NCBI GenBank assembly: GCA_024679065.1
Contig: JAGIQG010000004.1
Coordinates: 62,868,001-62,932,000 of the forward strand
Direction: 5' to 3'
DNA length: 64,000 bases
Source: Sphyrna mokarran
Lineage: Eukaryota
Shown here: piece by piece, positions 7,446 through 64,000 of the stretch
Layout: each line of letters opens with the position of its first letter
Numbering within the stretch: the first letter of the stretch is position 1
Made by a program: the position numbers and the translations under genes
The notes under the pieces: model-generated
Databases searched by the model: none
The model's input: only the letters and a program-made list of their open reading frames with translations
Told to the model about the DNA's origin: nothing

Positions 7446-7817
7446 AGTGCTTCACGTCGTTAGTGTACGCTTGACCTGGATCATTTGATGGGCAACATGA
7501 CAGCTCAGTGACTATCGCTGTGCTGTGCAGATACATGGATTTGGGCCTGTGTCTGTGGGAGTTTGCGTATTCTCCCCGTGCTTGCGTGGGTTTTCTCCGG
7601 GAGCTCCGGTTTCCTCCCACATCCCAAAGATGTGCTCTTAGGCTAATTGGCAAAACAAATTCTCCCTAAATTGTCTCAAATTTGGTTTTTAATCCATGGA
7701 TCTATAAACATGGACAGGGATCATGGGTGGGGGTGGGGGCGTCAGGGTGGCGGCGTGGACTCGTTGGGCCGGGGGGCCTGTTTCCCGTGCTGTTTTGTTC
7801 TTTGTTCTTCTTTGTTT
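7446..7817 (+). mobile_element. CR1-C 3' UTR fragment (SINE-containing end)
   Basis: Matches the 3' part of the copies at 16379 and 30092; (TTGTTCT) tail. Confidence 0.9.
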
Positions 7818-10649: not shown

Positions 10650-11304
10650 GTGGAGCACACCGGAGGGTGTCCTCCTTCATAATAAGTACTCCTGCTTGAG
10701 TACCACAGGGTGGGACAACTCGTCCGAGGGAGGCTGCAGTGGCCCGCTCTCTAAACCTGAGCCAGTACGCCAAAAAGCTAAGGAAGAGAGAGGCAAGGCG
10801 ATACGAATAGGGGACTCCACTGTGAGAGGTTCAGACAGGCATTTTTGTAGACGCAGGCGAGAGTCGCGGATGGTGGTTTGTCTTCCTGGAGCTGGGATCC
10901 GAGATGTTTCTGGACGCCTCCCAGACATCCTGAAAGCGGAGGGTGAGGAACCTGAAGTTGTGGTGCATATAGGTACTGCAGAAATAGGCAGGAAGAGGGA
11001 GGCAGTCATCAAAAGGGATTATAGGGAACTGGATAGGAAGCTGAGGAAAAGGAAAGCGAAGGTAGTAATTTCAGGATTGCTGCCTGCGCCTCGGGAGAAT
11101 GAGAGCAGGAATAAAATGAGGTGAAGGATGAATGCATGGCTGAGGGACTGGAGCAAGGGGCAGGGATTCAGGTTCATAGATCATTGGGACCTCTTTAGGG
11201 GCAGGTGTGACCTGTATAGAAAGGACGGGTGGCACTTGAACTCTTGTGAGACTAATATCTTGGCAAGTAGACTAGCTCGGGCTACTGGGGGATCTTTAAA
11301 CTAG
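10650..11304 (+). pseudogene. CR1-A ORF1 C-terminal part, SGNH/GDSL esterase-like domain (internal TGA at 11122)
   Basis: IGDSTVRG, VCLPGA, VHIGTAEIG, KDGWHLN, ending GSLN* (TAG 11302-11304). Confidence 0.9.
11295..11301 (+). other. Candidate -1 frameshift slippery heptamer T_TTA_AAC, CR1-A
   Basis: In ORF1 phase (TCT TTA AAC TAG); -1 frame TTT AAA CTA GAA AAG... runs without a stop into ORF2. Confidence 0.65.
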
Positions 11305-12042
11305 AAAAGCTGGGGGGTAGGAATATCGATGGGATGGTGAATAAGGAGGTTAGTCCCCAGGTAGGGAAGGACTGTAGGCCCTCTGAGAGGGGGGTTAGGC
11401 AGGTGGTGGAAAAGGGAAATATCCTGACTGAGGGGCTGAGGTGTGTCTATTTTAATGCCAGGAGTGTAGTAAATAAGGTAGATGAGCTTAGGGCGTGGAT
11501 TGCTGCTTGGGAGTGTGATGTGGTGGCCATTACAGAGACTTGGTTGTCTCAGGGACAGGACTGGGTACTTCAGGTGCCGGAATTCAGATGCTTCAGGAGG
11601 GACAGGGTTGGGGCAAAAGAGGAGGTGGTGTGGCACTGTTGATCAGGGACAGTGTCATGGCTGTAGAGAAGGTGGAAGACGGGGAGGGAATGTCTACAGA
11701 TCTCTGTGGGTGGAAGTTAGGAACAGCAAAGGGTCGATAACTTTGCTGGGTGTATTCTATAGGCCGCCCAATAGCGACAGGGAACTTGAGGTGCAGATAG
11801 GGAAACAGATCCTACTCAGATGTAAAAATAACAGGGTTGTCGTGATGGGAGATTTCAATTTCCCAAACATCGACTGGAATATCCCAAGGGTAAGGGGTGT
11901 GGATGGTGTGGAGTTTGTTAGGTGTGTTCAGGAAGGTTTTCTGATACAGTACGTGGAAAAGCCTACGAGAGGAGAGGCTGTACTTGACCTGATGCTTGCT
12001 AATGAGCCAGGGCAGGTGTCGGATCACACGGTAGGTGAGCAT

Positions 12043-12172: not shown

Positions 12173-12489
12173 ATCCTGACTGAGGCTCAGTGACTATCGC
12201 TGTGCTGTACAGATAGATGGATTTGGGCCTGTGTCTGTGAGAGTTTGCGCATTCTGCCCGTGCTTGCGTGAGTTTTCTCCGGGTGCTCCAGTTTCCACCC
12301 ACATCCCAAAGGTGTGCTTTTAGGGTAATTGGCAAAACAAATTCTCCGTAAATTGTCTCAAATTTGTTTTTTAATCCATAGATCTATAAACATGGACAGG
12401 AATCGTGGGTAGAGGTGGGAACATCGGGGTGGCGGCGCGGGTGCGCTGGGCCGAAGGGCCTGTTTCACGTTCTGTTTTGTTCTTTGTTC
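12173..12489 (+). mobile_element. CR1-C 3' fragment nested in CR1-A
   Basis: V-SINE core plus tail inserted at GAAAACAT|TAGG. Confidence 0.92.
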
Positions 12490-13898
12490 ATTAGGCAGGT
12501 AATTGGATGTATAAACTGGAAGGAGGTGTTCTTGGGGAAGAGTACAGAAGGAAAGTGGTGGATTTTCAAGGAATGTTTGTCTGGGCCACTGCAACACAAC
12601 GTTGCGAGGAGTCAAGGAGGTTCTGGTAGGACGCGGGAACCGTGGTGCATGAAGGTAGTGGTGAACCTAGTTAGGAAGTAAAAAAAGGTATATAAAAGGT
12701 TCAGAGAGCTAGGGAATGTTAGGGATCAAGAGGAGTATAAGGTGTGTAGAAGGGAACTTAAAAAGAAAATTAGGAAAGCCAGAAGGGGTCATGAGAAGGC
12801 CTTGGCAGGTAAGATTAAGGAGAATCCCATGGCCTTCTACAAATATGTGAAAAGTAAAAGGATGAGAAGAGAGGGGATAGGGCCTATAAAAGGTGAAGGG
12901 GGAAAAGTCTGTGTGAATCCGGAAGAAATAGCAGAGGTGCTTAATGATTGCTTTGCCTCAGTATTCACAGCGGAAAGTGAACTGAGAGATTGCACTGCAG
13001 GTTTGAGGCATACGGAAAAGATTGAGTATGTGGATGTTAGGAAAGAGGATGTGTTAGACCTGTTAAATTCTATCAAGGTAGACAAGTCGCCGGGACCGGA
13101 TGGGATGTACCCCAGGTTATTATGGGAGGTGAGGGAAGTGGTTGCAGAGCCCCTGGCGATGATATTTGCATCATCCATGGAAACAGGAGAGGTTCCGGAG
13201 GATTAGAGAATTGTGGATGAGGTTGCTATCTTTAAGAAAGGGAACAGGGATAGTTCAGGAAATTACCGACCGGTGAGTTTGACTTCAGTGGTTGGTAAGC
13301 TGATGGAGAGGCTTCTGAGTGATAAGATATACGAACATTTGGAGAAGTTTGGACTGATTAGAAATAGTCAGCATGGTTTTGTCAAGGGCAGGTCATGCCT
13401 CACGAGCTTAGTTGAGTTCTTCGAAAATGTGACTGAACACATTGACGAAGGAAGGGCGGTGGACGTAGTGTACATGGACTTTAGCAAGGCTTTTGATAAG
13501 GTCCCCCATGCAAGACTTCTGAAGAAGGTGAGAGAGCATGGGATCCAAGGGGCTTTGGCCTCGTGGATCCAGAACTGGCTTCACGGCAGAAGGCTGAGAG
13601 TGGTTGTGGATGGATCTTGTTCTGCATGGAGGTCGGTAACTAGTGGAGTGCCCCAGGGATCTGTTCTGGGACCCCTGCTGTTTGTCATTTTCATAAATGA
13701 CCTGGATGAGAAAGTGGAGGGATGGATTAGTAAGTTCACCGACGATACAAAGGTCGGTGGTGTTGTGGATGGTCTGGAGGGATGCCAAAAGTTTCAGCGG
13801 GACATAGACAGGATGCAAGACTGGGTGGAGAAGTGGCAGATGGACTTCAACACGGATAAATGTGTAGTGGTCCATTTTGGCAGGAATAATGAGATGAA

Positions 13899-15959: not shown

Positions 15960-16232
15960 CCCTGATTAGCACTGCTACCTCACAGCACAGGGACATGAGT
16001 GTATTTCCTAGCTTGGGTCTGCACTTTCTCCCCGTGCCTAAGCAGGTTTCCGTTGCATGCTCCAGTTTCCTCCCACAGTCCAAAGATATGCTGATTCGGT
16101 TCCAGTGCCCATGCAAAATTCTACTTCCATGTACACGAGTGGGTGGCAGAGTGTGGCGAGTAGGGGGAGTATCATCATCTCTTCATTGCAGTATTAATAT
16201 AAGCCTACTTGTCATACTAATAAATAAACTAA
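15960..16232 (+). mobile_element. Degenerate tRNA-derived V-SINE with a different tail
   Basis: TTAGCACTGCT..CACAGC head, TTCTCCCCGTG..TTTCCTCCCACAGTCCAAAGAT core, CTTCATTGCAGT..AATAAATAAACT tail. Confidence 0.7.
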
Positions 16233-16378: not shown

Positions 16379-17119
16379 ACGAGGGGTCACGGGCTTAGGG
16401 TTAGGGGGGTAAGGTATAGTTTGGATGCTAGAGGGAGTGTTTTTTGCACAGAGGGTGGTGGGGGTATGGAATGCGCTGCCAAGTAAAGTGGTGGAGGCAG
16501 GTACTCTGGAGTTATTTAAGAAATACTTAAATGGGCACATGGACAGAATGGGAATGGAGGGGTATAGAAAACTGATTTAAAATAGGGATCATGAGCCTTC
16601 GGAGTCCCTGGGAAGTGTGTAAATAGATGATGATATTGATGTACTTGTTTTTATCCTACAGGTGCTTTGGTCCACCTTGTTGTCTAACGAGGGGCATACA
16701 CGCGATGGGTCGTGAGAGGGCTGCTCTTGGATTTTTTTCGAGAGTATCCTAGTGCTTCACGTCGTTAGTGTACGCTTGACCTGGACCATTTGATGGGCAA
16801 CACGACAGCTCAGTGACTATCGCTGTGCTGTGCAGATACATGGATTTGGGCCTGTGTCTGTGGGAGTTTGCGCATTCTCCCCGTGCTTGCGTGAGTTTTC
16901 TCCGGGCGCTCCGGTTTCCTCCCACATCCCAAAGATATGCTCTTAGGCTAATTGGCAAAACAAAATCCCCCTAAATTGTCTCAAATTTGTTTTTTAATCC
17001 ATAGGTCTATAAACATGGACAGGGATCACAGGTAGAGGTGGAAACAGCGGGGTGGCGGCACGGGATCGTTGGGCCGAAGGGCCTGTTCCCCGTCCTGTTT
17101 TGTTCTCTATTCTTTGTTC
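16379..17119 (+). mobile_element. CR1-C: ORF2 C-terminus, ~214 nt spacer, embedded SINE-derived 3' end
   Basis: RGHGLRVRG..GYRKLI* (TAA 16578-16580); SINE head begins at 16795. Confidence 0.93.
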
Positions 17120-23061: not shown

Positions 23062-23390
23062 ACCATTTGATGGGCAACACGACAGCTCAGTGACTATCGC
23101 TGTGCAGTGCAGATACATGGATTTGGGCCTGTGTCTGTGGGAGTTTGCGCATTCTCCCCGTGCTTGCGTGGGTTTTCTCCGGGTGCTCCGGTTTCCTCCC
23201 ACATCCCAAAGATGTGCTCTTAGGCTAATTGGCAAAACAAATTCTCCCTAAATTGTCTCAAATTTGGTTTTTAATCCATAGATCTATAAACATGGACAGT
23301 GATCGCGGGTAGAGGTGGGAACATCGGGGTGGCGGCGCGGGCTCGTTGGGCCGAAGGGCTTGTTTCCCGTGCTGTTTTGTTCTTTGTTCT
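23062..23390 (+). mobile_element. CR1-C 3' fragment
   Basis: Starts in the spacer (ACCATTTGAT) just upstream of the SINE head. Confidence 0.92.
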
Positions 23391-30091: not shown

Positions 30092-31315
30092 AAGAATGTA
30101 GTGGGGAGGTATATGATAAAGGGTAGACCTATTAAGAGTATAGAAACGCAGAGGGACCTGGGGGTGCAGGTGAACAAGTCTCTGAAGGCGGCAGAGCAAG
30201 TGAAGAAGGTTGTGAAGAAAGCATATAGTATGCTAGCCTTTATAGGAAGGGGTATAGAGTACAAGAGCTGGCCTTTAATGTTGCAGTTGTATAAAACGCT
30301 GGTTAGACCTCATTTGGAATACTGCGTCCAATTCTGGTCGCCTTACTAGCGGAAGGACGTGGAGACTCTGGAGAGAGTGCAGAAGAGGTTTACCAGGATG
30401 CTGCCTGGTATGGAAGGTCAGAGTTACGAGGAAAGGTTAGGCAAATTGGGGCTGTTTTCCTTAGACAAACGTAGACTTAGAGGAGATGTAATAGAGGTGT
30501 ACAAGATTATGAGGGGTCTAGATAGAGTAAACAGGTTTAAACTTTTTCCTAGGATGGACTCAAATAGCACGAAGGGACACAGGCTTAGGGCGTGGGGAGG
30601 GGGGGTGGTAGGGTAAGGTATAATTTGGATGCCAGAGCGAGTTTTTTTTCATACAGAGGGTGGTGGCAGTATGGAATGCGCTTCCAAGTAGAGTGGTGAA
30701 GGCAGGCACTCTGGAGTTATTTAAGAGACACTTAGATGATGGGCACATGAACAGAATGGGAATAGAGGGTTACAGAAGACTGATTTAAAATAGGGATCAT
30801 GACCCTTGGGAGTCTCTGGGTGATGTGTAAATAGACGATGATATTGACGTACTTGTTTTTATCCTACAGATGATTTCGTCCGCCTTGTTGTCTAACAAGG
30901 GTTATTCACGCGATGGGTCATGAGAGGGCTGCTCTTGGATTTTTCAAGAGTATCCTAGTGCTTCACGTCGTTAGTGCACGCTTGACCTGGATCATTTGAT
31001 GGGCAACACGACAGTTCAGTGACTATCGCTGTGCTGTGCAGATACATGGATTTGGCCCTGTGCCTGTGGGAGTTTGCGCATTCTCTCCGTGCTTGCGTCG
31101 GTTTTCTCCGAGGTGTTCCAGTTTCCTTCCACATCCCAAAGATGTGCTCTTACGCTAATTGGCAAAACAAATTCTCCCTAATTTGTCTCAAATTTGGTTT
31201 TGAATCCATAGATCTATAAACATAGACAGGGATCACGGGTTGAGGTGGGAACATCGGGGTTTTGGCGCGGGCTCATTGGGCCGAAGGGCCTGTTTCCCGT
31301 GTTGTTTTTGTTCTT
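30092..31315 (+). mobile_element. CR1-C, 5'-truncated
   Basis: QRDLGVQV..LYKTLVRPHLEYCVQFWSP ORF2 end followed by spacer and SINE-derived 3' end. Confidence 0.95.
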
Positions 31316-31317
31316 CG

Positions 31318-31866
31318 TACGCATCAGATGACAAGACAAAGTACCAGACACTGAAGTTCTCTGTACAGCAAGTCTACCATCATCCACACACTGCTGATGA
31401 GAATGCAGACCCGGTGGCAAAGCATGTCATCCATATGCTAAACCAGCGCAGTCGAAGCCGCTCATTTTTGGGGAACTCTCTGCTGGAATACGCTCACATG
31501 GGGGGCGGGAGGAGGCGGTGGCAGAAGAAATGTTACAAAGCCACGTTCAAGGCCTCTCTGAAGTCACTTGACATGGATACGACTACCTGGGAAATGCTGG
31601 CACAAAACCGCCCTGCCTGGTGCTGCCTCATCCACGAGGGCTATCAAGCTTACAAAGCAAGGTGCATTGCTAAAGAACAAGTTAACCGCCAGCTGTGCAA
31701 GCCCTGAGCCACCAGCACAACAACTCCAATGCCTACACAAGTCTGTCCATTATGCGCCAGGACATTACATGTCCGAATTGGCCTCATCAGTCATCTTTGG
31801 ACATGTCAGCCTCAAAATGACTGATTGTGTTGTGGTCCTCATCCATGACGATGGACGAATGACAAC
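31318..31866 (+). mobile_element. RTE-clade LINE 3' fragment
   Basis: QDKVPDTEVL, QKKCYKATFKASLKS..TWEMLAQNRPAW, CPLCARTLHVRIGLISHL zinc finger, GACGATGGACGAA 3' end. Confidence 0.85.
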
Positions 31867-39506: not shown

Positions 39507-41093
39507 GAAGAGAACAGTGACCACCATACCACACAACCCTGCCACAGAAACGTCTGCAAGATGTGCCAGATCATCGACAGGGATGCCATCATCTCACATG
39601 AGAAACCATCCAGCGGGATTTGTTTCACAAACAGGGCATATATAGATACGAATTCAGTTACAAGATAATGGTTGGAATGCAAGCCTAAATGATAATCAAG
39701 CCTTTATACAGGCGCAGAGAATTTGAGTGGAGAGAAGGTTAAACACAGGTTAAACGCATGTGAATCGTCTCCAGCCAGGACAGTTAGTGGGATTCTGTAA
39801 ACCCAGGCACGTCATGGGGTTACAGATTGTGTGGCATAAAGCCAAGATCCCTTTTGAGGCTGTACTCATGTGTGTGGAAGTTGGCTATCAGTCTCCGCAC
39901 AGGGACTCTGTGCTGCCATGTGTCGTGAAGGTCTGCTTGGAGAACACTTACCTGAAAATCAGAAGCGGAATCCCCGTGACCGTTGAACTGTTCGTCAACA
40001 GGAAGAGAACAATCTTGCCTGGTGATTGTTGAGTGGTGCTCATTCATCCGTTGTATAGCATCTGCATGGTCTCCCCAATGTACTATGCCTCCAGACATCC
40101 TTTCCTGCAGTGTATCAGGTAGGCACAGTCGGCAGAGTTGCAAAAGTACAAAGAACAAAGAATAGAGAACAAAACAGCACGGGAAACAGGCCCTTCAGCC
40201 CAACGAGCCCGCGCCGCCACCCCGATGTTCCCAAATCTATCCGTGATCCCTGTCCATGTTTATAGATCTACGGATTAAAATCCAAATTTGAGACAATTTA
40301 GGGAGAATTTGTTTTGCCAATTAGCCTAAGAGCACATTTTTGGGATGTGGGAGGAAACCGGAGCACATGGAGAAAACACATGCAAGCATGGGGAGAATGC
40401 GCAAACTCCCACAGACATGGGCTCAAATCCATGTATCTGCACAGCACAGCGATAGTCACTGAGCTGTAGTGTTGCCCATCAAATGGTCCAGGTCAAGCGT
40501 TCACTAACGACGTGAAGCACTAGGATACTCTTGAAAAAAAAGCCAAGAGCAGCCCTCTCACGACCCATCGCGTGTATGCCCCTCTTTAGACAACAAGGTG
40601 GATCAAGGCACCTGTAGGATAAAAACAAGCACATCAATATCATCATCTATTTACACAATTCCCAGGGACTCACAAGGCTCATGATCTCCCATTTTAAATC
40701 AGTTTTCTATACCCCTCCATTCCCATTGTGTTCATGTGCTCATCTAATTATCTCTTAAATAACTCCGGAGTGCCTGCCTCCACCACTTTACTTGGCAGCG
40801 CATTCCATACCTCCGCCACCCTCTGTGTGAAAAAACTCCCTCTAGCATCCAAATTATACTTTACCCACCTCACCCTAAGCCCGTGACCCTTTGTGCTATT
40901 CTAGTCCATCCTAGGAAAGAGGTTAACCCTGTTTACTCCATCTATACCCCTCATACCATGCAAATACATACAGTATGTACAGTACGTACCGTGCAACAGG
41001 TTGATGATGTTCTGACATGAGATGATGGCACATGTGTCGATGATCTGACATGCCTTGCAGAGGTTGCTTTGGCAGGATTATGTGGTGTTGGGA
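39507..41093 (-). mobile_element. Penelope-like element (GIY-YIG region + partial pLTR), split by a CR1-C insertion, with an inverted piece at 39507-39606
   Basis: QRMNEHHSTITRQDCSLPVDEQFNGHGDSASDFQVSVLQ; TQPCHRNVCKMCQIID appears in both orientations. Confidence 0.8.
40150..40955 (-). mobile_element. CR1-C nested in Penelope element
   Basis: ORF2 end + spacer + SINE-derived end; AGTAC at 40145 and 40981 as possible TSD. Confidence 0.93.
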
Positions 41094-41321: not shown

Positions 41322-41778
41322 AGAATAAAGAACAAAACAGCACGGGAAACAGGCCCTTGGGCCCAACAAGCCCGCGCCGCCATCCCGATGTTCCCACTTC
41401 TACCCGCGATCCCTGTCCATGTTTATAGATCTATGGATTAAAAACAAAATTTGAGACAATTTAGGGAGAATTTGTTTTGCCAATTAGCCTAAGAGCACAT
41501 CTTTGGGATGTGGGAGGAAACCGGAGCGCACGGAGAAAACACAGGCAAGCACGGGGAGAATGCGCAAAATCCCACAGACACAGGCCCAAATCCATGTATC
41601 TGCACAGCACAGCGATAGTCACTGAGCTGTCGTGTTGCCCATCAAATGGTCCAGGTCAAGTGTACACTAATGACGTGAAGCACTAAAATACTCTCGAAAA
41701 AAGAATCCAAGAGCCGCCCTCTCACAACCCCATTGCGTGTATGCCCCTCGTTAGATAACAAGGTGGACCAAAGCATCT
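41322..41778 (-). mobile_element. CR1-C 3' UTR fragment
   Basis: 5' end abuts the tail of the CR1-B copy at 41779. Confidence 0.92.
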
Positions 41779-42396
41779 TAGAACATAGAACATAGAACAC
41801 TACAGCACAAACAGGCCCTTCGGCCCACAAGTTGTGCTGAACACATCAAAACCTACCCAGCCATAGACCTATCTATAACCCCCAATCCCATTGGATCCCA
41901 TATACTCATCCAGAAGTCTTTTAAAAGACCCCAGCGAGGTCGCCTCGACCACCACCGACGGCAGCCGATTCCATTCACTCACCACCCTCTGAGTGAAAAA
42001 CTTTCCCCTAGCATCCCCTCTTGTACTTGCTTCCCTGCACCTTAAATCTGTGCCCTCTCGTCGCGACCATTTCAGCCCTGGGAAATAGTCTCTGAGAGTC
42101 CACCCTATCTATTCCTCTCAACATCTTGTAAAGCTCTATCAGGTCGCCTCTCAACCTTCGTTTCTCCAGGGAGAACAGTCCCAGCTCCCTCAACCTGTCT
42201 TCATAAGGCATGCCTCCCAATCCAGGCAACATCCTTGTAAATCTCCTCTGCACCCTTTCAATAGCTTCCACGTCCTTCCTATAGTGAGGCGACCAGCACT
42301 GCGCACAGTACTCCAAGTGTGGTCTGACAAGGGTCCTATAAAGCTGCAGCATTACCTCCTGACTCCTGAACTCAATCCCTCGATGAATGAAGGCCA
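41779..42396 (-). mobile_element. CR1-B 3' fragment
   Basis: AFIHRGIEFRSQEVMLQLYRTLVRPHLEYC; near-identical to 34873-35490. Confidence 0.95.
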
Positions 42397-46589: not shown

Positions 46590-47750
46590 CATGCTGAGGA
46601 CCCAAGGAAATTACAAAAAAAACCCGATTAAGTGAGTGGGCAAAGATGTGACAAATGAAGTACAACGTGGTAAATGTGAAATCGTCCATTTTGACAGGAA
46701 TTTAAAAAAGCGTATCATCTGAAGGGCGAGTATATTTCAGAGATCTGATGAATCACAGCAGACAAATATGCATGTACAGCAAGTAATTGGGAAAGCTAAT
46801 GGAATGGTGTCATTTGCTGCGAGGGGAATTGAACAGACTCGTTGGGAAGCTATGCTTCATTTAAACAATGTACTAGTGAGGCCACATTATACAGTATTGA
46901 TTGCCATGTCTGAGGAAAAATCATAGATCATAGAACCTTGCAGTGCAGAAAGAGACCCTTTGGCCCATCGAGTCTGCACCGACCACCATCCCATCCAGGC
47001 CTTACCCCACCCCCCCCACCCCCCACCCCCAATCTCTCTAATCTACCAACTAGAATACTAAGGATCTTTTTTTTTAGCATGGCGAATCTACCTAACCCGC
47101 ACATCCTTGGACTATGGGAGAAAACCGAAGCATCCGGAGGAAACCCACGCAGACACGAGAGAATGTGCAAACTCCATACAGACGGTGAACAGGGCCGGGA
47201 ATCGAACCCAGCTCCCTGGAGTTGTGAAACAGCAGTGCTAACCACTGTGCTACCGTGCCGCCCATGAAGATGTAAATGTTTTGGAAGCGGTTCAGAGACG
47301 GTTTACTGTATTAAAACCTGGAATGAATGGATTGGCTGTGAAGAAAGATTAGCCAGGCTAACGTTGCATCTGTTGGAGTTTCTAAAGGCAATTAGCGACT
47401 TCATCGACACATATAAGACGCATGCCGTTTTGACAGGGTGTCTCGGGAGAGGATGCATACGTTGGAGAATCTAGACTTAAAGGTGACTGTTTAAGACAAG
47501 TGGTTGCCCATTGAAAAGGAACAATAGGCGACTTTTTCACTTAGAAAGTTGTGAATTTTTGGAACTCTTCCTGAATAAGTGCAGGAAACAGAATATTTGA
47601 ATATTTTAAGGCAACGGTGCATAGATGTGCAAGGGATGACCGGACATTGGATGTAGGCGGAATATAGACTTAGGGTCAGGTCAACCATGATTTTATGAAG
47701 TGGCCGAAAAGGCTCCAAAAGACTGAATGGTCTTCTCCTACTCCTTGTTC
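46590..47750 (+). mobile_element. Old CR1 3' fragment interrupted by a SINE
   Basis: EWAKM.QMKYNV, LEAVQRRFT relics on either side of the SINE. Confidence 0.7.
46921..47263 (-). mobile_element. Full-length HE1-type V-SINE
   Basis: GGGCGGCACGGTAGCACAGTGG (A box), GGTTCGATTCCC (B box), V core, CR1-type tail. Confidence 0.93.
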
Positions 47751-48214: not shown

Positions 48215-48522
48215 AGAACAAAGAACAAAAACAGCACGGGAAACAGGCCCTTCGGCCCAACGAGCCCGCGCCAACACCCCGATGTTCTCACCTCTACCCA
48301 TGATCCCTGTCTATGTTTATAGATCTATGGATTAAAAACCAAATTTGAGACAATTTAGGGAGAATTTGTTCTGCCAATTAGCCTAAGAGCACATATTTGG
48401 GATGTGGGAGGAAACCGGAGCGCCCGGAGAAAACCCACGCAAGCACGGGAAGAATGCGCAAACTCCCACAGACACAGGCCCAAATCCATGTATCTGCACA
48501 GCACAGAGATAGTCACTGAGCT
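48215..48522 (-). mobile_element. CR1-C 3' fragment ~170 bp upstream of the Ig-gene ATG
   Basis: Matches other CR1-C ends; truncated at AGCTCAGTGACT. Confidence 0.92.
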
Positions 48523-48694: not shown

Positions 48695-48749
48695 ATGTTG
48701 AATAATAAGTTGATCCTGTGTTTCACTATCGTGGAGATAATTCATGGAG
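48695..48749 (+). CDS. IgSF V-C1-TM receptor, exon 1 (leader) MLNNKLILCFTIVEIIHG
   Basis: ACAATG start, hydrophobic core, phase-1 donor G|GTGACT matching the next exon. Confidence 0.75.
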
Positions 48750-48948
48750 GTGACTGCTTATTTTCTGTCTTGTATCTCTCAACATAAACTGAAATATTGT
48801 CTCTTTCACAGATATGAACATATATCTACTTTGAACTTTCGTAATCACACTCCATCCTCTATACCCCGTCCCCTTAGTACTGAACCATCCCCAAACCCCT
48901 TGGTATTTATAAAGTTAGTTTTAAAGTATTTATAATTAATTGTTTCAG

Positions 48949-49263
48949 TAGATACTTCAATTCAAGTAATTCAACTTCCTGAAAGTCTGAGAACAATCCA
49001 AGGCACAACTGTCACTTTTCATTGTTCGGTACCGTACCCTCCAGACGACGCGAATGTGACCTTCATGTGGTTGAAAGAAGGTGAAAATCGGCACCTGAGT
49101 ACAACCACCGATCACCGAAAGATTTTCGGCTTCACAAACAGATTTAGTGGCTTTCTTCGCATCACCAATGTAAGCTTCCAGGATGCTGGAATATATTACT
49201 GCTCGGTGCAACAACGTGGCTACATAACTGGAAATGTGATTGGATCTAACTTAACAGTATGGG
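48949..49263 (+). CDS. IgSF V-C1-TM receptor, VJ-type V-domain exon
   Basis: VIQLPESL..VTFHC..FMWLKEG..LRITNVSFQDAGIYYC..GNVIGSNLTVW; acceptor TTTCAG, donor G|GTGAGT; phase 1-1. Confidence 0.93.
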
Positions 49264-50078
49264 GTGAGTATCGAGATTTTGCAGAATGCATTATGTCATT
49301 GTGACATGTAAAACAGATCAAACATCAGACAATAATTGCAATTATTAGATCAAATCTCTCATGGGACATTGGAAGATTTAAGAACTAATAATAGAAAGTA
49401 GGAGGCATTTCATTTAGACATTCAATTGTCTGAAAGGACAAAGAAGAAAGTAGCTCAGGATTTGGGGAAAATTAAGAAATTACCGAAAATGCTGCAATGG
49501 GTAATCAGAACTGGCAGCATCTGTCGAGAGATGATCAGAGCTTCGATTTTGTCAGAACTGCCAAAATAGCCATTAGATCATCATTTGAAATCGCGAGCAA
49601 GGTTTCCTATCACAGTGAGATATCCCAACAATGTCCAGCGAACCGACAACAAGCCCGCTAATTCAGTACTTAAAGCTACCAACAACACATTCAAATTTTC
49701 CGTTAAAAATAGCTCCTGAAATTGCTACAAATATCGATCGCGACTGTTTTCGCTATAATGTAACTTGTTGAACAGTGATAATCGTGAATGTTGCTCTGTT
49801 TGTGACAGTCAGAAACGTGGGCAGAAAGAAATTCCATTCCAACAGTCTTGAAAACTGAAAATGCCCTTGTTTGCTATATCGCCAGAAATTAAATCGTTTC
49901 TTCTCGCCCGATTCACATATAAATTCTATTTTTAATTTCTTTATAATCATTAAATATCATCTTTTACATACATCATCTGTAATCACAAGCACATGATAAT
50001 AATCATTTGTAAAGTTTGAAAAAAGCTCCAATGTGACATCAAAGTGCCATAGATTTTATTTTATGTCCTGTTTTATAG

Positions 50079-50384
50079 CACCTCCAAGCCAAGTGCAAAT
50101 TCTCCCTAGTGATCCTCGAAGCGATTCATCCGTATCCCTTGTGTGTGAGGCGTCTGAATTTTACCCTGAAATTATTGCACTCGAATGGTATAAAGATGGT
50201 ATCGAAATTTCAACTGGGGTATCTGTCTTGAAACAGCAAAAATCAGACGGATTGTACGAAGCTCGCAGCTTTTGGAAAGAGTTACAGCCAGCTCCGATTG
50301 GAAGTGTTTACAGCTGTCTGGTCTCTCACGTTACATTGGAAACTCCATTAGTTGCTACGTATGTCATTACATATCCTAACGCAG
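50079..50384 (+). CDS. IgSF V-C1-TM receptor, C1-set domain exon
   Basis: VSLVCEASEFYPEIIALEWYKDG..DGLY..YSCLVSHVTL (FYP and YxCxVxH); TTTTATAG acceptor, G|GTACAT donor. Confidence 0.93.
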
Positions 50385-51048
50385 GTACATGACTAACTAC
50401 CGAGATAGTCAATTAATATCTTACCGGTCAGAAAGGACAACTACTTAAATCAATACAAAGTACAATACATTTTCAATGTTAACCAAACTTTTGTGCATAT
50501 GTAGAACAGCAATCTTTGACTCCATTTTAAACGCTTTTTATTTGTTTTTTTTTACGAATTTTAGATAAATTAGTAAAGTACGATTTCCCCCTTTTAAGCC
50601 TATGTTGAGGCTTCAAATCATTAAAGATAAACCTGAGAAATTATAATAAGCATTACTCAGTGACGGAATAAATTGTAATGGGGATATGCCGATCTAAGAG
50701 CATTGATAAATGACCCACAGGCGTCAAGAGATAGGAGAGGGTGTTGGTTGGGAGCGAGGAGTGTGGTGGTGGGTGGTGGGGGGACAGAGTTAGAGGAGTG
50801 ACATTGGTGAGAGGAATGGTGATGTTATGCATCGAATTGTTACAGAACAGATCACTCCGTCTGAAGAGTCATTGGAGCCGGTGAATAGCTGACTCTAACA
50901 AAACAAAGAAAAGCAGAGACATAAGTTCGTTAAACTTGCCTGTTAGTGTGCAGTTATAGAAAACATGATTAAAGGTGAAAATTACGATAGCTTTGTGAGC
51001 AGGCAATATACTTAATATTTGATCTTTGCTTTAATATTAATTTTGTAG

Positions 51049-51158
51049 GCAGTCAAATCTCCCGCCTTCTGCTGATTTCTGGATGCATTGGATATGGTCT
51101 AATATGTCTACTCTTCAGTGTCTTAATTTGGAAGCGACACCAGTTAAAGGATTTGTAG
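51049..51158 (+). CDS. IgSF V-C1-TM receptor, transmembrane exon with short tail and TAG
   Basis: GSQISRLLLISGCIGYGLICLLFSVLIWKRHQLKDL*; TTTTGTAG acceptor; AG|GTAAGG donor 2 nt after the stop. Confidence 0.85.
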
Positions 51159-62850: not shown

Positions 62851-64000
62851 GCTAATTTGCAAGTTTGCAGACGATACTTGCTAATCAGCAAGTATGCAGA
62901 CGATACAAAGATTCCTGGACTTGCGGATAGAGAGGAGCATTGTCAGACGATGCAGCAGGACATAGATAGGCTGGTAGCTTGGGCAGATAGATGGCAGATG
63001 GAATTCAATCCTGATAAATGTGAGGTGATGCATTTCGGGAGATAGAATGTAGGGGGGAGGTATATGATAAAGGATAGACCTGTTAAGAGCATAGAAACGT
63101 GGAGGGACCTGGGGGTGCAGGTGAACAAGTCTCTGAAGATGGCAGAGCAAGTGGAGAAGGTTGTGAAGAAAGCATGTAGTATGCTAGCCGTTATAGGAAG
63201 GGGTATAGAGTACAAGAGCAGGCCTTTAATGTTGCAGTTGTATAAAATGCTGGTTAGACCTCATTTGGAATACTGCGCCCAGTTCTGGTCGCCATACTAC
63301 TGGAAGGACGTGGAGACTCTGGAGAGAGTGCAGAGGAGGTTTACCAGGATGCTGCCTGATATGGAAGGTCTGAGTTACGAGGAGAGGTTAGGCAAATTGG
63401 GACTGTTTTCCTTAGAAAGACGTCGACTTAGAGGAGATGTAATAGAGGTGTACAAGATAATGCGGGGTATAGATAGAGTAAATAGGGTTAAGCTTTTTCC
63501 TAGGATGGACCCAAATAGCATGAGGGGTCACGGGCTTAGGGTGAGGGGGGTAAGGTATAATTTGGATGCTCGAGGGAGTTTTTTCACACAGAGGGTGGTG
63601 GGGATGTGGAATGTGCTGCCAAGTAAAGTGGTGGAGGTAGGTACTCTGGAGTTATTTAAGAAATACTTAGATGGGCACATGAACAGAATAGGAATGGAGG
63701 GGTATAGAAAACTGATTTAAAATAGGGATCATGAGCATTGAGAGTCCCTGGGAAGTGTGTCAATAGATGATGATATTGATGTACTTGTTTTTATCCTACA
63801 GGTGCTTTGGTCCACCTTGTTGTCTAACAAGGGGCATACATGTGATGCCTCGTGAGAGGCCTGCTCTCGGATTTTTTTTCGAGAGTATCCTAGTGCTTCA
63901 CGTCATTAGTGTATGCTTGACCTGGACCATTTGATGGGCAGCACGACATCTCAGTGACTATCGCTGTGCTGTGCAGATACATGGATTTAGACCTGTGTCT
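62851..64000 (+). mobile_element. CR1-C, 5'-truncated at YADD, running off the window end
   Basis: ISKYADDTKI..GYRKLI* (63720), spacer, SINE head GGGCAGCACGAC near 63936. Confidence 0.95.

What the first reader, a model, noticed from the sequence alone, without database searches (positions are those of the whole stretch)
16379..17119. A CR1 LINE family that has captured a whole V-SINE as its own 3' end
Seen: four CR1-C copies (16379, 30092, 40150-40955 minus, 62851) join the ORF2 stop (GYRKLI*) to the same ~214 nt spacer, then to a segment starting GGGCAACACGACAGCTCAGTGACTATCGCTG. By my count this matches the head of the free SINE at 47263 at 22 of 31 positions. The V-SINE core (GGAGTTTGC..TTCTCCCCGTG..CCAAAGATGTGC) and the GGGCCGAAGGGCCTGT end with a (TTGTTCT)n tail follow. 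The B box is missing. Families A, B and D reach their tail about 60-80 nt after the stop, whereas CR1-C has no such motif until after the SINE. Established: HE1 SINEs borrow their 3' end from a CR1-type LINE. Inference: the reverse happened here, with a LINE adopting its parasite's tail by read-through or template switch, and the chimera amplified (nine or more pieces in 64 kb). Its truncated copies would be mis-annotated as SINEs.
Basis: partly seen in the sequence, partly recalled or inferred. Interest (0 to 1): 0.8.

Follow-up and report, generated by a model that had tools for sequence, protein, structure and literature searches.

The report
CR1 LINE carrying an embedded V-SINE
A family of jumping genes (a CR1 LINE) in what looks like a shark or ray genome carries a decayed copy of its own small parasite (a V-SINE) as a fixed part of its tail region, an unusual reversal of the normal borrowing whose origin and use are still open.

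Summary
The window has nine pieces of one CR1 lineage ("CR1-C"). Each has unique flanks and a different 5' truncation point, and all eight that reach the 3' end share the same end. All 4 copies that reach the ORF2 stop (…GYRKLI*) continue into the same 214-nt spacer. A SINE-like block follows: a tRNA-head relic without a B box, the V core and about 45 nt after it. Then come 72 nt of unknown origin, a two-stem CR1 tail and (TTGTTCT)n.

The head match is weak but specific. It is 23 of 36 ungapped, reached by 1 of 5000 shuffles, and a whole-window scan recovers 7 of 7 CR1-C heads. A head-only profile misses all of them. All segments are equally diverged (K2P about 0.10), so the composite spread as one unit.

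The direction SINE to LINE is favoured. Whether the tail itself came from the SINE is unresolved, and the mechanism is untested. I found no description in print; Dfam and Repbase could not be checked.

The parts
16381..16580 (+). 5'-truncated end of CR1-C ORF2, including the stop codon at 16578-16580 (…MEGYRKLI*)
   Evidence: tblastn with the 218-aa CR1-C ORF; coordinates; alignment
16581..16794 (+). 214-nt spacer of unknown origin, found only in CR1-C
   Evidence: An nhmmer profile of 4 spacers hits only the 4 copies it was built from plus 2 partial CR1-C copies; the next best hit has E 2. MFE -69.5 kcal/mol, z -2.2
16795..16862 (+). Relic of the tRNA-derived SINE head: an A-box-like stretch is kept, the B box is missing, and it ends in the short stretch just before the core
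   Evidence: 23 of 36 ungapped matches to the free SINE head from base 1. 1 of 5000 shuffles reaches that, and the window scan finds 7 of 7 CR1-C heads. No tRNA hit. The head-only profile fails
16863..16940 (+). V-SINE core (V domain)
   Evidence: Local alignment score 74 against a shuffle mean of 14.4, z 24.8, 0 of 2000 shuffles; blastn 79.1% over 86 nt
16941..16981 (+). Post-core stretch, similar to free V-SINEs when anchored at the core end (the test used 45 nt from 16941)
   Evidence: Anchored global alignment of 45 nt from the core end: S17934 0 of 3000 shuffles, first unit of S39325 11 of 3000, S47265 212 of 3000, second unit of S39325 not significant
16982..17053 (+). 72 nt of undetermined origin
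   Evidence: No significant local similarity to the ORF2 end plus UTR of families A, A2, B or C, or to the 3' bodies of 4 free SINEs; all z are 1.7 or less
17054..17097 (+). CR1 tail: an outer stem and an inner hairpin (GGGCC-GAAG-GGCC)
   Evidence: RNAalifold on 17 tails gives 12 pairs. One pair is G-C in 7 CR1-C copies and A-U in 6 A/B copies
17098..17119 (+). Terminal 7-nt repeat (TTGTTCT)n
30092..31320 (+). Longest copy with a complete 3' end: about 690 nt of ORF2 (one stop, one frame break), spacer, SINE-like block, tail
40153..40955 (-). Copy with ORF2 end, spacer, block and tail
62851..64000 (+). Copy reaching back to the end of the RT domain (FADD/YADD stretch): a 218-aa open ORF2 end at 63064-63720, spacer 63721-63935, and a head that the window end cuts off
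   Evidence: RVT_1 match of 62884-63042, E 1.4e-4, 22.1 bits, below the 29.6 cut-off
41322..41778 (-). 5'-truncated copy that starts in the spacer and abuts the end repeat of another CR1
7446..7809 (+). 5'-truncated copy: last 48 nt or so of the spacer, block, tail
23062..23390 (+). 5'-truncated copy that starts about 10 nt before the head
12185..12492 (+). 5'-truncated copy that starts about 12 nt inside the head
48215..48522 (-). 5'-truncated copy that starts about 12 nt inside the head
46950..47265 (-). Free HE1-like V-SINE used as comparator: tRNA-like head, V core, CR1-type tail with an 8-nt end repeat
   Evidence: (tRNA model 19.8 bits, E 0.048)

Best explanation
CR1-C is a lineage of CR1-clade LINEs whose 3' UTR of about 540 nt is a composite that moves with the element.

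Anatomy. The ORF2 reading frame leaves its homology with sister family A exactly where family A has its stop (…GYR). It runs on for three codons (KLI) into a 214-nt spacer of unknown origin. Next comes a block taken from a V-SINE: a tRNA-head relic that has lost the B box, the V core and about 45 nt after it. Then follow 72 nt of unknown origin, the two-stem CR1 tail and a 7-nt end repeat.

How it moves (inferred from established knowledge of stringent-type LINEs, not shown here). The LINE RNA is made from the element's own 5' promoter. ORF2 protein recognises the tail stem-loops and primes reverse transcription at the end repeat. Frequent 5' truncation then leaves pieces that look like SINEs. 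The embedded head cannot act as a Pol III promoter.

Origin. The SINE block was acquired once, before the burst that made the copies in this window. Its direction was from a SINE into the LINE. How it was acquired remains open. The possibilities are template switching during reverse transcription, read-through from a tail-less LINE copy into a downstream SINE, or a nested insertion followed by loss of one tail. Whether the present tail is the LINE's own or the SINE's is also open.
For: One unit:
- 9 pieces with unique flanks, graded 5' ends and a common 3' end.
- 4 of 4 copies that reach the stop share the junction and the spacer.
- K2P is 0.114 in the ORF2 end, 0.103 in the spacer and 0.100 in the block.

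CR1 identity:
- The ORF2 end is 60-64% identical to families A/A2/B in the window.
- It falls inside an elasmobranch CR1 clade (SH-aLRT 98), with bird and turtle CR1 as outgroup.
- The piece upstream matches the end of RVT_1.
- The two-stem tail is shared with A/B, with a G-C to A-U compensatory pair.

SINE-derived block:
- Core z 24.8.
- The profile alignment covers the free SINE from head to tail, E 1.3e-22.
- Head: 23 of 36 from base 1; the global alignment is reached by 0 of 3000 shuffles.
- In an ungapped scan 1 of 5000 shuffles reaches the observed match. Window-wide, the 12 sites with at least 21 of 36 are 4 free SINE heads, 7 of 7 CR1-C heads and 1 other.
- The post-core stretch is similar when anchored.

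Direction:
- The free head scores as tRNA; the embedded one does not and lacks the B box.
- V-SINEs occur from lamprey to lungfish and beyond vertebrates, with different LINE partners (passages of PMC4824008).
- Families A, A2 and B have short UTRs.

Not a Pol III element: 0 of 9 pieces start at head base 1.
Against: - The head homology is weak. A local alignment with 2/-3 scoring is not significant (285 of 3000 shuffles).
- A head-only nhmmer profile built from 4 free SINE heads finds 0 of 7 CR1-C heads at E up to 1000.
- 286 of about 540 nt of the UTR (the spacer plus the distal 72 nt) match nothing in the window. 'SINE capture' therefore explains only part of the composite.
- The tail is no closer to the free SINE than to the sister LINEs.
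- No full-length CR1-C is in the window, so autonomy is not shown.
- dN/dS between the two longest copies is 0.58 from 11 synonymous and 25 non-synonymous differences, which is inconclusive.
- Nothing outside this window was examined by me.
Confidence: 0.7

Rival explanations
1. The LINE was the donor. The V core and its surroundings are native to this CR1 lineage's 3' UTR, and HE1-type SINEs arose by joining a tRNA head to that UTR, as LINE 3' ends normally give rise to SINE tails.
For: - SINE tails are known to come from LINE 3' ends, and HE1/HER1 is listed as such a pair (table of PMC3747384).
- The origin of the V domain is unknown (PMC5786205, section 24).
- The head-only profile does not detect the embedded head.
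- 72 nt of the block region match no free SINE.
Against: - The embedded block begins with a stretch that matches the tRNA-derived head from its first base. The match is 23 of 36, reached by 1 of 5000 shuffles, and 7 of 7 CR1-C heads are recovered in a window-wide scan with only 1 unrelated site. A LINE-native UTR has no reason to hold that.
- V-SINEs with other LINE partners are spread across vertebrates and beyond (PMC4824008 passages), while CR1-C is one branch among elasmobranch CR1s.
- Sister families have short UTRs without a V core.
Confidence: 0.12
2. The copies belong to a non-autonomous composite: a piece of ORF2, the spacer, the SINE block and the tail, moved in trans by other CR1 families. 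There would then be no working LINE that owns this UTR.
For: - No full-length CR1-C is in the window. The longest piece starts at the end of the RT domain.
- The tail structure is shared with families A/B, so trans-mobilisation is conceivable.
- dN/dS of 0.58 is not clearly below 1.
Against: - The 5' ends are graded (9 pieces, 8 different start points), which is what truncation of a longer RNA gives. There is no fixed short 5' end.
- The 218-aa ORF2 end of the copy at 63064-63720 is still open.
- Its closest relatives form their own ORF2 branch. That fits a separate coding lineage.
Confidence: 0.1
3. The pattern is not one element. It would be either repeated independent insertions of a SINE-like element next to CR1 ends, or a segmental duplication, or an assembly artefact.
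For: CR1-type elements do pile up at each other's end repeats. Copy 41778-41322 sits directly on another CR1's tail.
Against: - The junctions between ORF2 stop and spacer, and between spacer and head, are identical in 4 of 4 copies, while all flanks differ.
- The spacer occurs nowhere else in the window.
- Divergence is equal in all segments.
- First readers report the same composite on other pieces of the genome (unchecked notes).
Confidence: 0.02

Closest known systems
HE1 SINE / HER1 LINE pair of sharks and rays (Ogiwara et al. 1999, 2002). I saw it only as a table row in PMC3747384 and in passages of PMC4824008. The original papers were not held, so further detail is recalled.
   Same: Cartilaginous-fish CR1-type LINE and tRNA-derived V-SINE that share a conserved 3' tail. 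The free SINEs in this window fit that description.
   Different: In that pair only the tail is shared, and the flow is from LINE to SINE. Here the LINE also carries the head relic and the V core, so sequence went from SINE to LINE.
Chimeric L1 insertions made with U6, Alu and mRNA by template switching or ligation, and L1 transduction (abstract of bioRxiv 10.1101/2025.02.02.635956; PMC4476161 seen only in the search listing)
   Same: A LINE reverse transcriptase joins LINE sequence to another RNA. An Alu (a SINE) can end up fused to an L1.
   Different: Those are mostly single dead-end insertions with the partner at the 5' side of a relaxed-type LINE. Here the partner sits inside the 3' UTR of a stringent-type CR1, and the chimera itself became the amplifying lineage.
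Exchange of SINE parts by template switching, and LINE-derived SINE bodies (Nishihara 2016, PMC4824008 passages; Kojima 2018, PMC5786205 section 24)
   Same: Modular reshuffling among SINE heads, bodies and LINE tails. Template switching is the accepted route.
   Different: Both papers describe LINE parts entering SINEs, or SINE parts moving between SINEs. [quoted passage not shown] Here a V domain sits in a LINE.
CR1 families A, A2 and B of the same window
   Same: ORF2 end 60-64% identical. Same two-stem tail and 7-nt end repeat. Family A ends …GYR stop at the point where CR1-C continues.
   Different: Their tail hairpin starts 36-44 nt after the stop, against 490 nt in CR1-C. They have no spacer, no head relic and no V core.

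Membership tests
CR1-clade LINE | ORF2 with a reverse transcriptase related to CR1 elements | tested here: met
   The 218-aa ORF2 end finds bird, turtle and elasmobranch CR1-type RT proteins and sits inside an elasmobranch CR1 clade. The 53-aa piece upstream matches RVT_1 positions 150-192, E 1.4e-4, below the cut-off because it is short.
CR1-clade LINE | 3' end made of a conserved stem-loop followed by a short tandem repeat instead of poly(A) | tested here: met
   A two-stem consensus shared by 17 tails, with one compensatory pair; (TTGTTCT)n at the end of 8 of 8 complete 3' ends.
CR1-clade LINE | Copies mostly 5'-truncated, with a common 3' end | tested here: met
   9 of 9 pieces are truncated, at 8 different points.
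CR1-clade LINE | Full-length element with ORF1 and an endonuclease domain | not testable with these tools
   No CR1-C piece in the window reaches beyond the end of the RT domain.
V-SINE superfamily (asked of the embedded block) | Central V domain of about 80 nt | tested here: met
   78-nt core, z 24.8 against the free SINE; 75.6-82.6% identity in 6 of 8 copies by blastn.
V-SINE superfamily (asked of the embedded block) | tRNA-derived head with A and B boxes (Pol III promoter) | tested here: not met
   No tRNA match at E up to 10, against 19.8 bits for the free SINE. The B-box stretch is absent in the alignment. Only a relic remains.
V-SINE superfamily (asked of the embedded block) | Short independent copies that start at the first base of the head | tested here: not met
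   0 of 9 pieces start at head base 1. Two start about 12 nt inside the head and one about 10 nt before it.
V-SINE superfamily (asked of the embedded block) | 3' tail shared with a partner LINE | tested here: met
   The tail is shared with families A/A2/B and with the free SINE.
3' transduction by read-through (as known for L1) | The element's own 3' end is kept upstream of the carried flank | tested here: not met
   No tail motif lies between the stop and the spacer end. Other CR1 tails match only the last 48 nt or so of the element. The spacer matches nothing else.

The most novel reading that the evidence does not exclude
A stringent-type LINE lost its own 3' UTR at the stop codon and was rescued by taking over a SINE together with its tail. 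It has since amplified as a LINE-SINE chimera. This would be the first LINE lineage known to carry a conserved SINE-superfamily body (the V domain). It would turn the old question of what the V domain does for retrotransposition into a direct test, by deleting it from a LINE that depends on the same UTR.
Probability: 0.3. Interest if true: 0.8.

Novelty: new variant of a known kind. Interest (0 to 1): 0.58.

Why it matters
SINEs are understood as parasites that copy the tail of a LINE. Sequence flowing the other way, into a LINE lineage that then keeps amplifying, is not part of the textbook picture. I found no account of it in the papers I could search.

It has a practical side. Half of the pieces here would be scored as SINEs by a repeat annotator, which distorts SINE and LINE counts and ages in elasmobranch genomes.

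It also gives a natural construct for asking whether the widely conserved V domain helps an RNA to be reverse-transcribed or to survive. If the V domain were instead native to a LINE UTR (the rival reading), that would bear on the unknown origin of a conserved SINE body.

Tried and rejected
Tests that gave nothing or went against my reading:
1. Head homology by local alignment with 2/-3 scoring is not significant (285 of 3000 shuffles). My first head test used a start coordinate 10 nt too late and gave z 0.1; one search corrected it.
2. A head-only nhmmer profile from 4 free SINE heads found 0 of 7 CR1-C heads at E up to 1000.
3. The unanchored local alignment of the 114 nt between core and tail against 4 free SINEs gave z of 1.0 or less. 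Only the anchored 45-nt test gave a signal.
4. The distal 72 nt, tested against the ORF2 end plus UTR of families A, A2, B and C and against 4 free SINE bodies, gave z of 1.7 or less. This rejects my idea that the stretch is a second, decayed copy of the LINE's own end.
5. The spacer profile found nothing outside CR1-C in the window.
6. Tail identity could not decide the donor: 27-33 of 47 against 30-31 of 47.
7. dN/dS is 0.58, inconclusive.
8. ARAGORN and Rfam at gathering threshold found nothing in the window.
9. No tree of V cores was built.

Literature limits:
- My first search used a term shared with cancer and zebrafish genes and was wasted.
- The two Ogiwara papers are not held.
- Supplements are closed and I did not ask for them. 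The consensus sequences of the 2026 CR1-group paper (PMC13343379) may contain this UTR. In its main text, 'SINE' and 'UTR' each occur once and neither concerns this.
- Dfam and Repbase cannot be searched here.
Full report
What is there. The window is repeat-rich DNA. Its CR1 proteins are closest to those of sharks and rays: Stegostoma, Hypanus, Chiloscyllium, Leucoraja and Pristis appear among the hits. Its free SINEs have a tRNA-like head, a V core and a CR1-type tail. I therefore take it for an elasmobranch genome; this is an inference and no tool named the organism.

All 8 pieces that reach the 3' end finish at the same tail and (TTGTTCT)n repeat; the ninth is cut by the window end. The 5' ends lie at 8 different points. 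All flanks differ. This is the pattern of a LINE copied by target-primed reverse transcription with 5' truncation. It is not a duplication of a locus.

The constant linkage. Four pieces reach back into ORF2: 16379, 30092, 40955(-) and about 62851. In 4 of 4 the frame ends …GY-R-(K/R)-L-I-stop and runs into the same spacer of 213-217 nt. In 3 of 4 the whole downstream block is visible; the fourth is cut by the window end 65 nt into the head. A profile of the spacer finds only CR1-C copies in the window, and the next best hit has E 2.

Exact coordinates in the reported copy:
- stop codon 16578-16580
- spacer 16581-16794
- head relic 16795-16862
- V core 16863-16940
- post-core stretch from 16941
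- distal stretch 16982-17053
- tail stems 17054-17097
- end repeat 17098-17119

How SINE-like is the block.
- The core is beyond doubt: score 74 against a shuffle mean of 14.4, z 24.8. By blastn, 6 of 8 copies match the free SINE at 75.6-82.6%.
- A profile of six CR1-C blocks aligns the free SINE at 47265-46950 over profile positions 6-325 of 329, E 1.3e-22.
- The head is the critical part, because only a tRNA-derived piece tells the direction of transfer.
A global alignment of the two heads beats 3000 of 3000 dinucleotide shuffles (z 5.1), and a local 1/-1 alignment is reached by 7 of 3000.
- Further evidence for the head: sliding the SINE's first 36 nt over the 283 nt between stop and core, the best site is exactly the head start, and 1 of 5000 shuffled regions reaches 23. 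Over the whole window on both strands, the 12 sites with at least 21 of 36 are 4 free SINE heads (the query among them), 7 of 7 CR1-C heads and 1 unrelated site.
- Evidence against the head: a 2/-3 local alignment is not significant (285 of 3000), and a profile built from four free heads alone finds none of the 7 CR1-C heads.
- The free head still scores as tRNA (19.8 bits, E 0.048, all 71 model positions). The embedded one gives no tRNA match at E up to 10 and has a gap where the free SINE has its B box.
- After the core, an anchored comparison of 45 nt is significant against two free copies (0 of 3000 and 11 of 3000) and not against two others (212 of 3000; z -0.1).
- The next 72 nt match neither the free SINEs nor any LINE end.

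So the block has the order of parts of a V-SINE and shares a head relic, a core and a post-core stretch with one. It is not demonstrably a whole SINE.

The tail. Seventeen tails were folded together: 7 CR1-C, 9 of families A, A2 and B, and 1 free SINE. They give a common inner hairpin and outer stem. One outer pair is G-C in the 7 CR1-C copies and A-U in 6 A/B copies. This is the kind of structure that stringent-type LINE proteins are known to recognise. I rely here on established knowledge; of PMC4176376 I saw only the search listing. Over 47 tail columns CR1-C shares 27-33 positions with families A/A2/B and 30-31 with the free SINE. The lengths of the stretches between the stems resemble the SINE. 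The letters after the hairpin and the 7-nt period of the end repeat resemble families A/B, whereas free SINEs have an 8-nt repeat. The donor of the tail cannot be named from this window.

Place among CR1s. The ORF2 end is 60-64% identical to families A, A2 and B of the window. In a quick maximum-likelihood tree of 32 rows (6 window pieces and 26 of the 120 proteins, chosen by me for elasmobranch names, high identity or as outgroup), CR1-C groups with two proteins from unnamed contigs, P0001 and P0005 (SH-aLRT 92). That group lies inside a clade with A and B (98), with birds and turtles as outgroup. Family A ends …GYR-stop. CR1-C is homologous up to that R and then continues into new sequence. 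The break between old and new sequence thus lies at the former stop codon, and the whole former UTR is either replaced or pushed 490 nt downstream. Of the 120 proteins, only P0001 (77% identical) has a similar extension (…GYRRLF); two others end …GYR.

Age and unity. Pairwise K2P is 0.114 for the ORF2 end (6 pairs), 0.103 for the spacer (6 pairs) and 0.100 for the block (28 pairs). The parts are therefore equally old in these copies, and the composite existed before the burst. The head relic alone shows 0.046, but on only 68 columns. dN/dS between the two longest copies is 0.58, from 11 synonymous and 25 non-synonymous differences. That is too few to say whether the lineage evolved under selection between insertions.

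Most likely explanation. A CR1 lineage acquired part of a V-SINE once and has since moved as one unit. The tail does the work and the rest of the UTR rides along.
- Shown: the anatomy, the linkage, the common 3' end, the truncation pattern, the shared tail structure, and the lack of a usable Pol III promoter.
- Inferred: the direction of transfer, from the head relic, the tRNA scores, the wide spread of V-SINEs reported in PMC4824008 and the short UTRs of the sister families.
- Also inferred: the mode of movement, from what is known of stringent LINEs.
- Open: how the pieces were joined. Classical read-through does not fit unless the progenitor had already lost its tail, because no tail lies between stop and spacer. 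Template switching from the 5' end of a SINE RNA fits the fact that the block starts at the SINE's first base, but it leaves the spacer unexplained. A nested insertion followed by loss of one of two tails is also possible.

What is known. I read passages or sections of five papers:
- The 2026 CR1-group survey (PMC13343379, passages) does not treat 3' UTRs or SINEs.
- The MetaSINE paper (PMC4824008, passages) describes the V domain, its spread, and template switching among SINEs.
- The 2013 review (PMC3747384, passages and a table) lists HE1 with HER1.
- Kojima 2018 (PMC5786205, passages and section 24) screened Repbase for similarities between SINEs and LINEs (this scope is recalled from its abstract, of which I saw only the start). 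[quoted passage not shown]
- The L1-chimera preprint (abstract only) covers Alu-L1 and other chimeras in human.

Searches brought up no paper that describes a LINE carrying a V domain or a captured SINE in its 3' UTR. This does not cover subscription journals, Repbase Reports, Dfam entries or supplementary files.

Earlier notes of this scan. Two look-ups list at least 12 first-reader notes on other pieces of the same genome that describe the same composite: a CR1 with a unique segment, an embedded V-SINE and then the tail. None is marked as followed up. They are unchecked notes by readers like the one who wrote this finding, not independent tests. They do suggest that the family is spread over the genome. 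One note calls part of the spacer a splice acceptor. I see the pyrimidine run and CAG at about 16650-16661, and one copy starts there, but I could not test the idea.

The best holder has 0.52 of the sampled words and runs of 13 other coded organisms hold 0.05-0.23. After that I ran no collection search for this element, so copy-number profile, expression and species range are unchecked.

Verdict. 'Whole SINE', 'the parasite's tail' and the proposed mechanism go beyond the evidence. It is a new variant of known kinds of LINE-SINE exchange, of moderate to good interest to transposon specialists and of practical weight for repeat annotation.

Noticed in passing
window 41322-41827: The CR1-C piece 41778-41322(-) begins directly on the (ATGTTCT)n end repeat of another CR1 (family A2 tail at 41781-41827). 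This is a tail-to-head pile-up that may reflect targeting of end-repeat-like sites.
   Followed up: no
window 12185 and 48522: Two independent pieces are 5'-truncated within 1-2 nt of each other, about 12 nt inside the head relic. This could be a pause or exit point of the reverse transcriptase, or chance.
   Followed up: no
window 15962-16230: An element with a V core (16016-16093) and a partial SINE head has a quite different, A/T-rich 3' end without the CR1 tail. Scan notes s1-918940 and s1-919086 speak of V-SINEs with two kinds of tail in this genome.
   Followed up: no
window about 62851-62910: In the longest CR1-C piece, the stretch coding the FADD/YADD motif of the reverse transcriptase is present twice in tandem (about 30 nt each).
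   Followed up: partly
protein P0001 (unnamed ENA contig of 768 nt): It is the closest relative of the CR1-C ORF2 end (77%) and the only one of 120 listed proteins with a similar three-to-four-residue extension after …GYR. The junction may be older than this genome's burst. Its DNA could not be fetched.
   Followed up: partly
window 16795-16862 and homologues: The head relic is less diverged among copies (K2P 0.046, 15 pairs, 68 columns) than the other segments (about 0.10).
   Followed up: no
window 16581-16794: The spacer folds better than most shuffles (MFE -69.5 kcal/mol, z -2.2, 3 of 200 as good). It starts with a hairpin right after the stop and holds a pyrimidine run plus CAG at about 16650-16661.
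   Followed up: partly
window 11281-11365 and 48695-51158: Other first-reader notes on this window concern a possible frameshift site at the ORF1/ORF2 junction of CR1 families, and an antigen-receptor-like gene. I examined neither.
   Followed up: no
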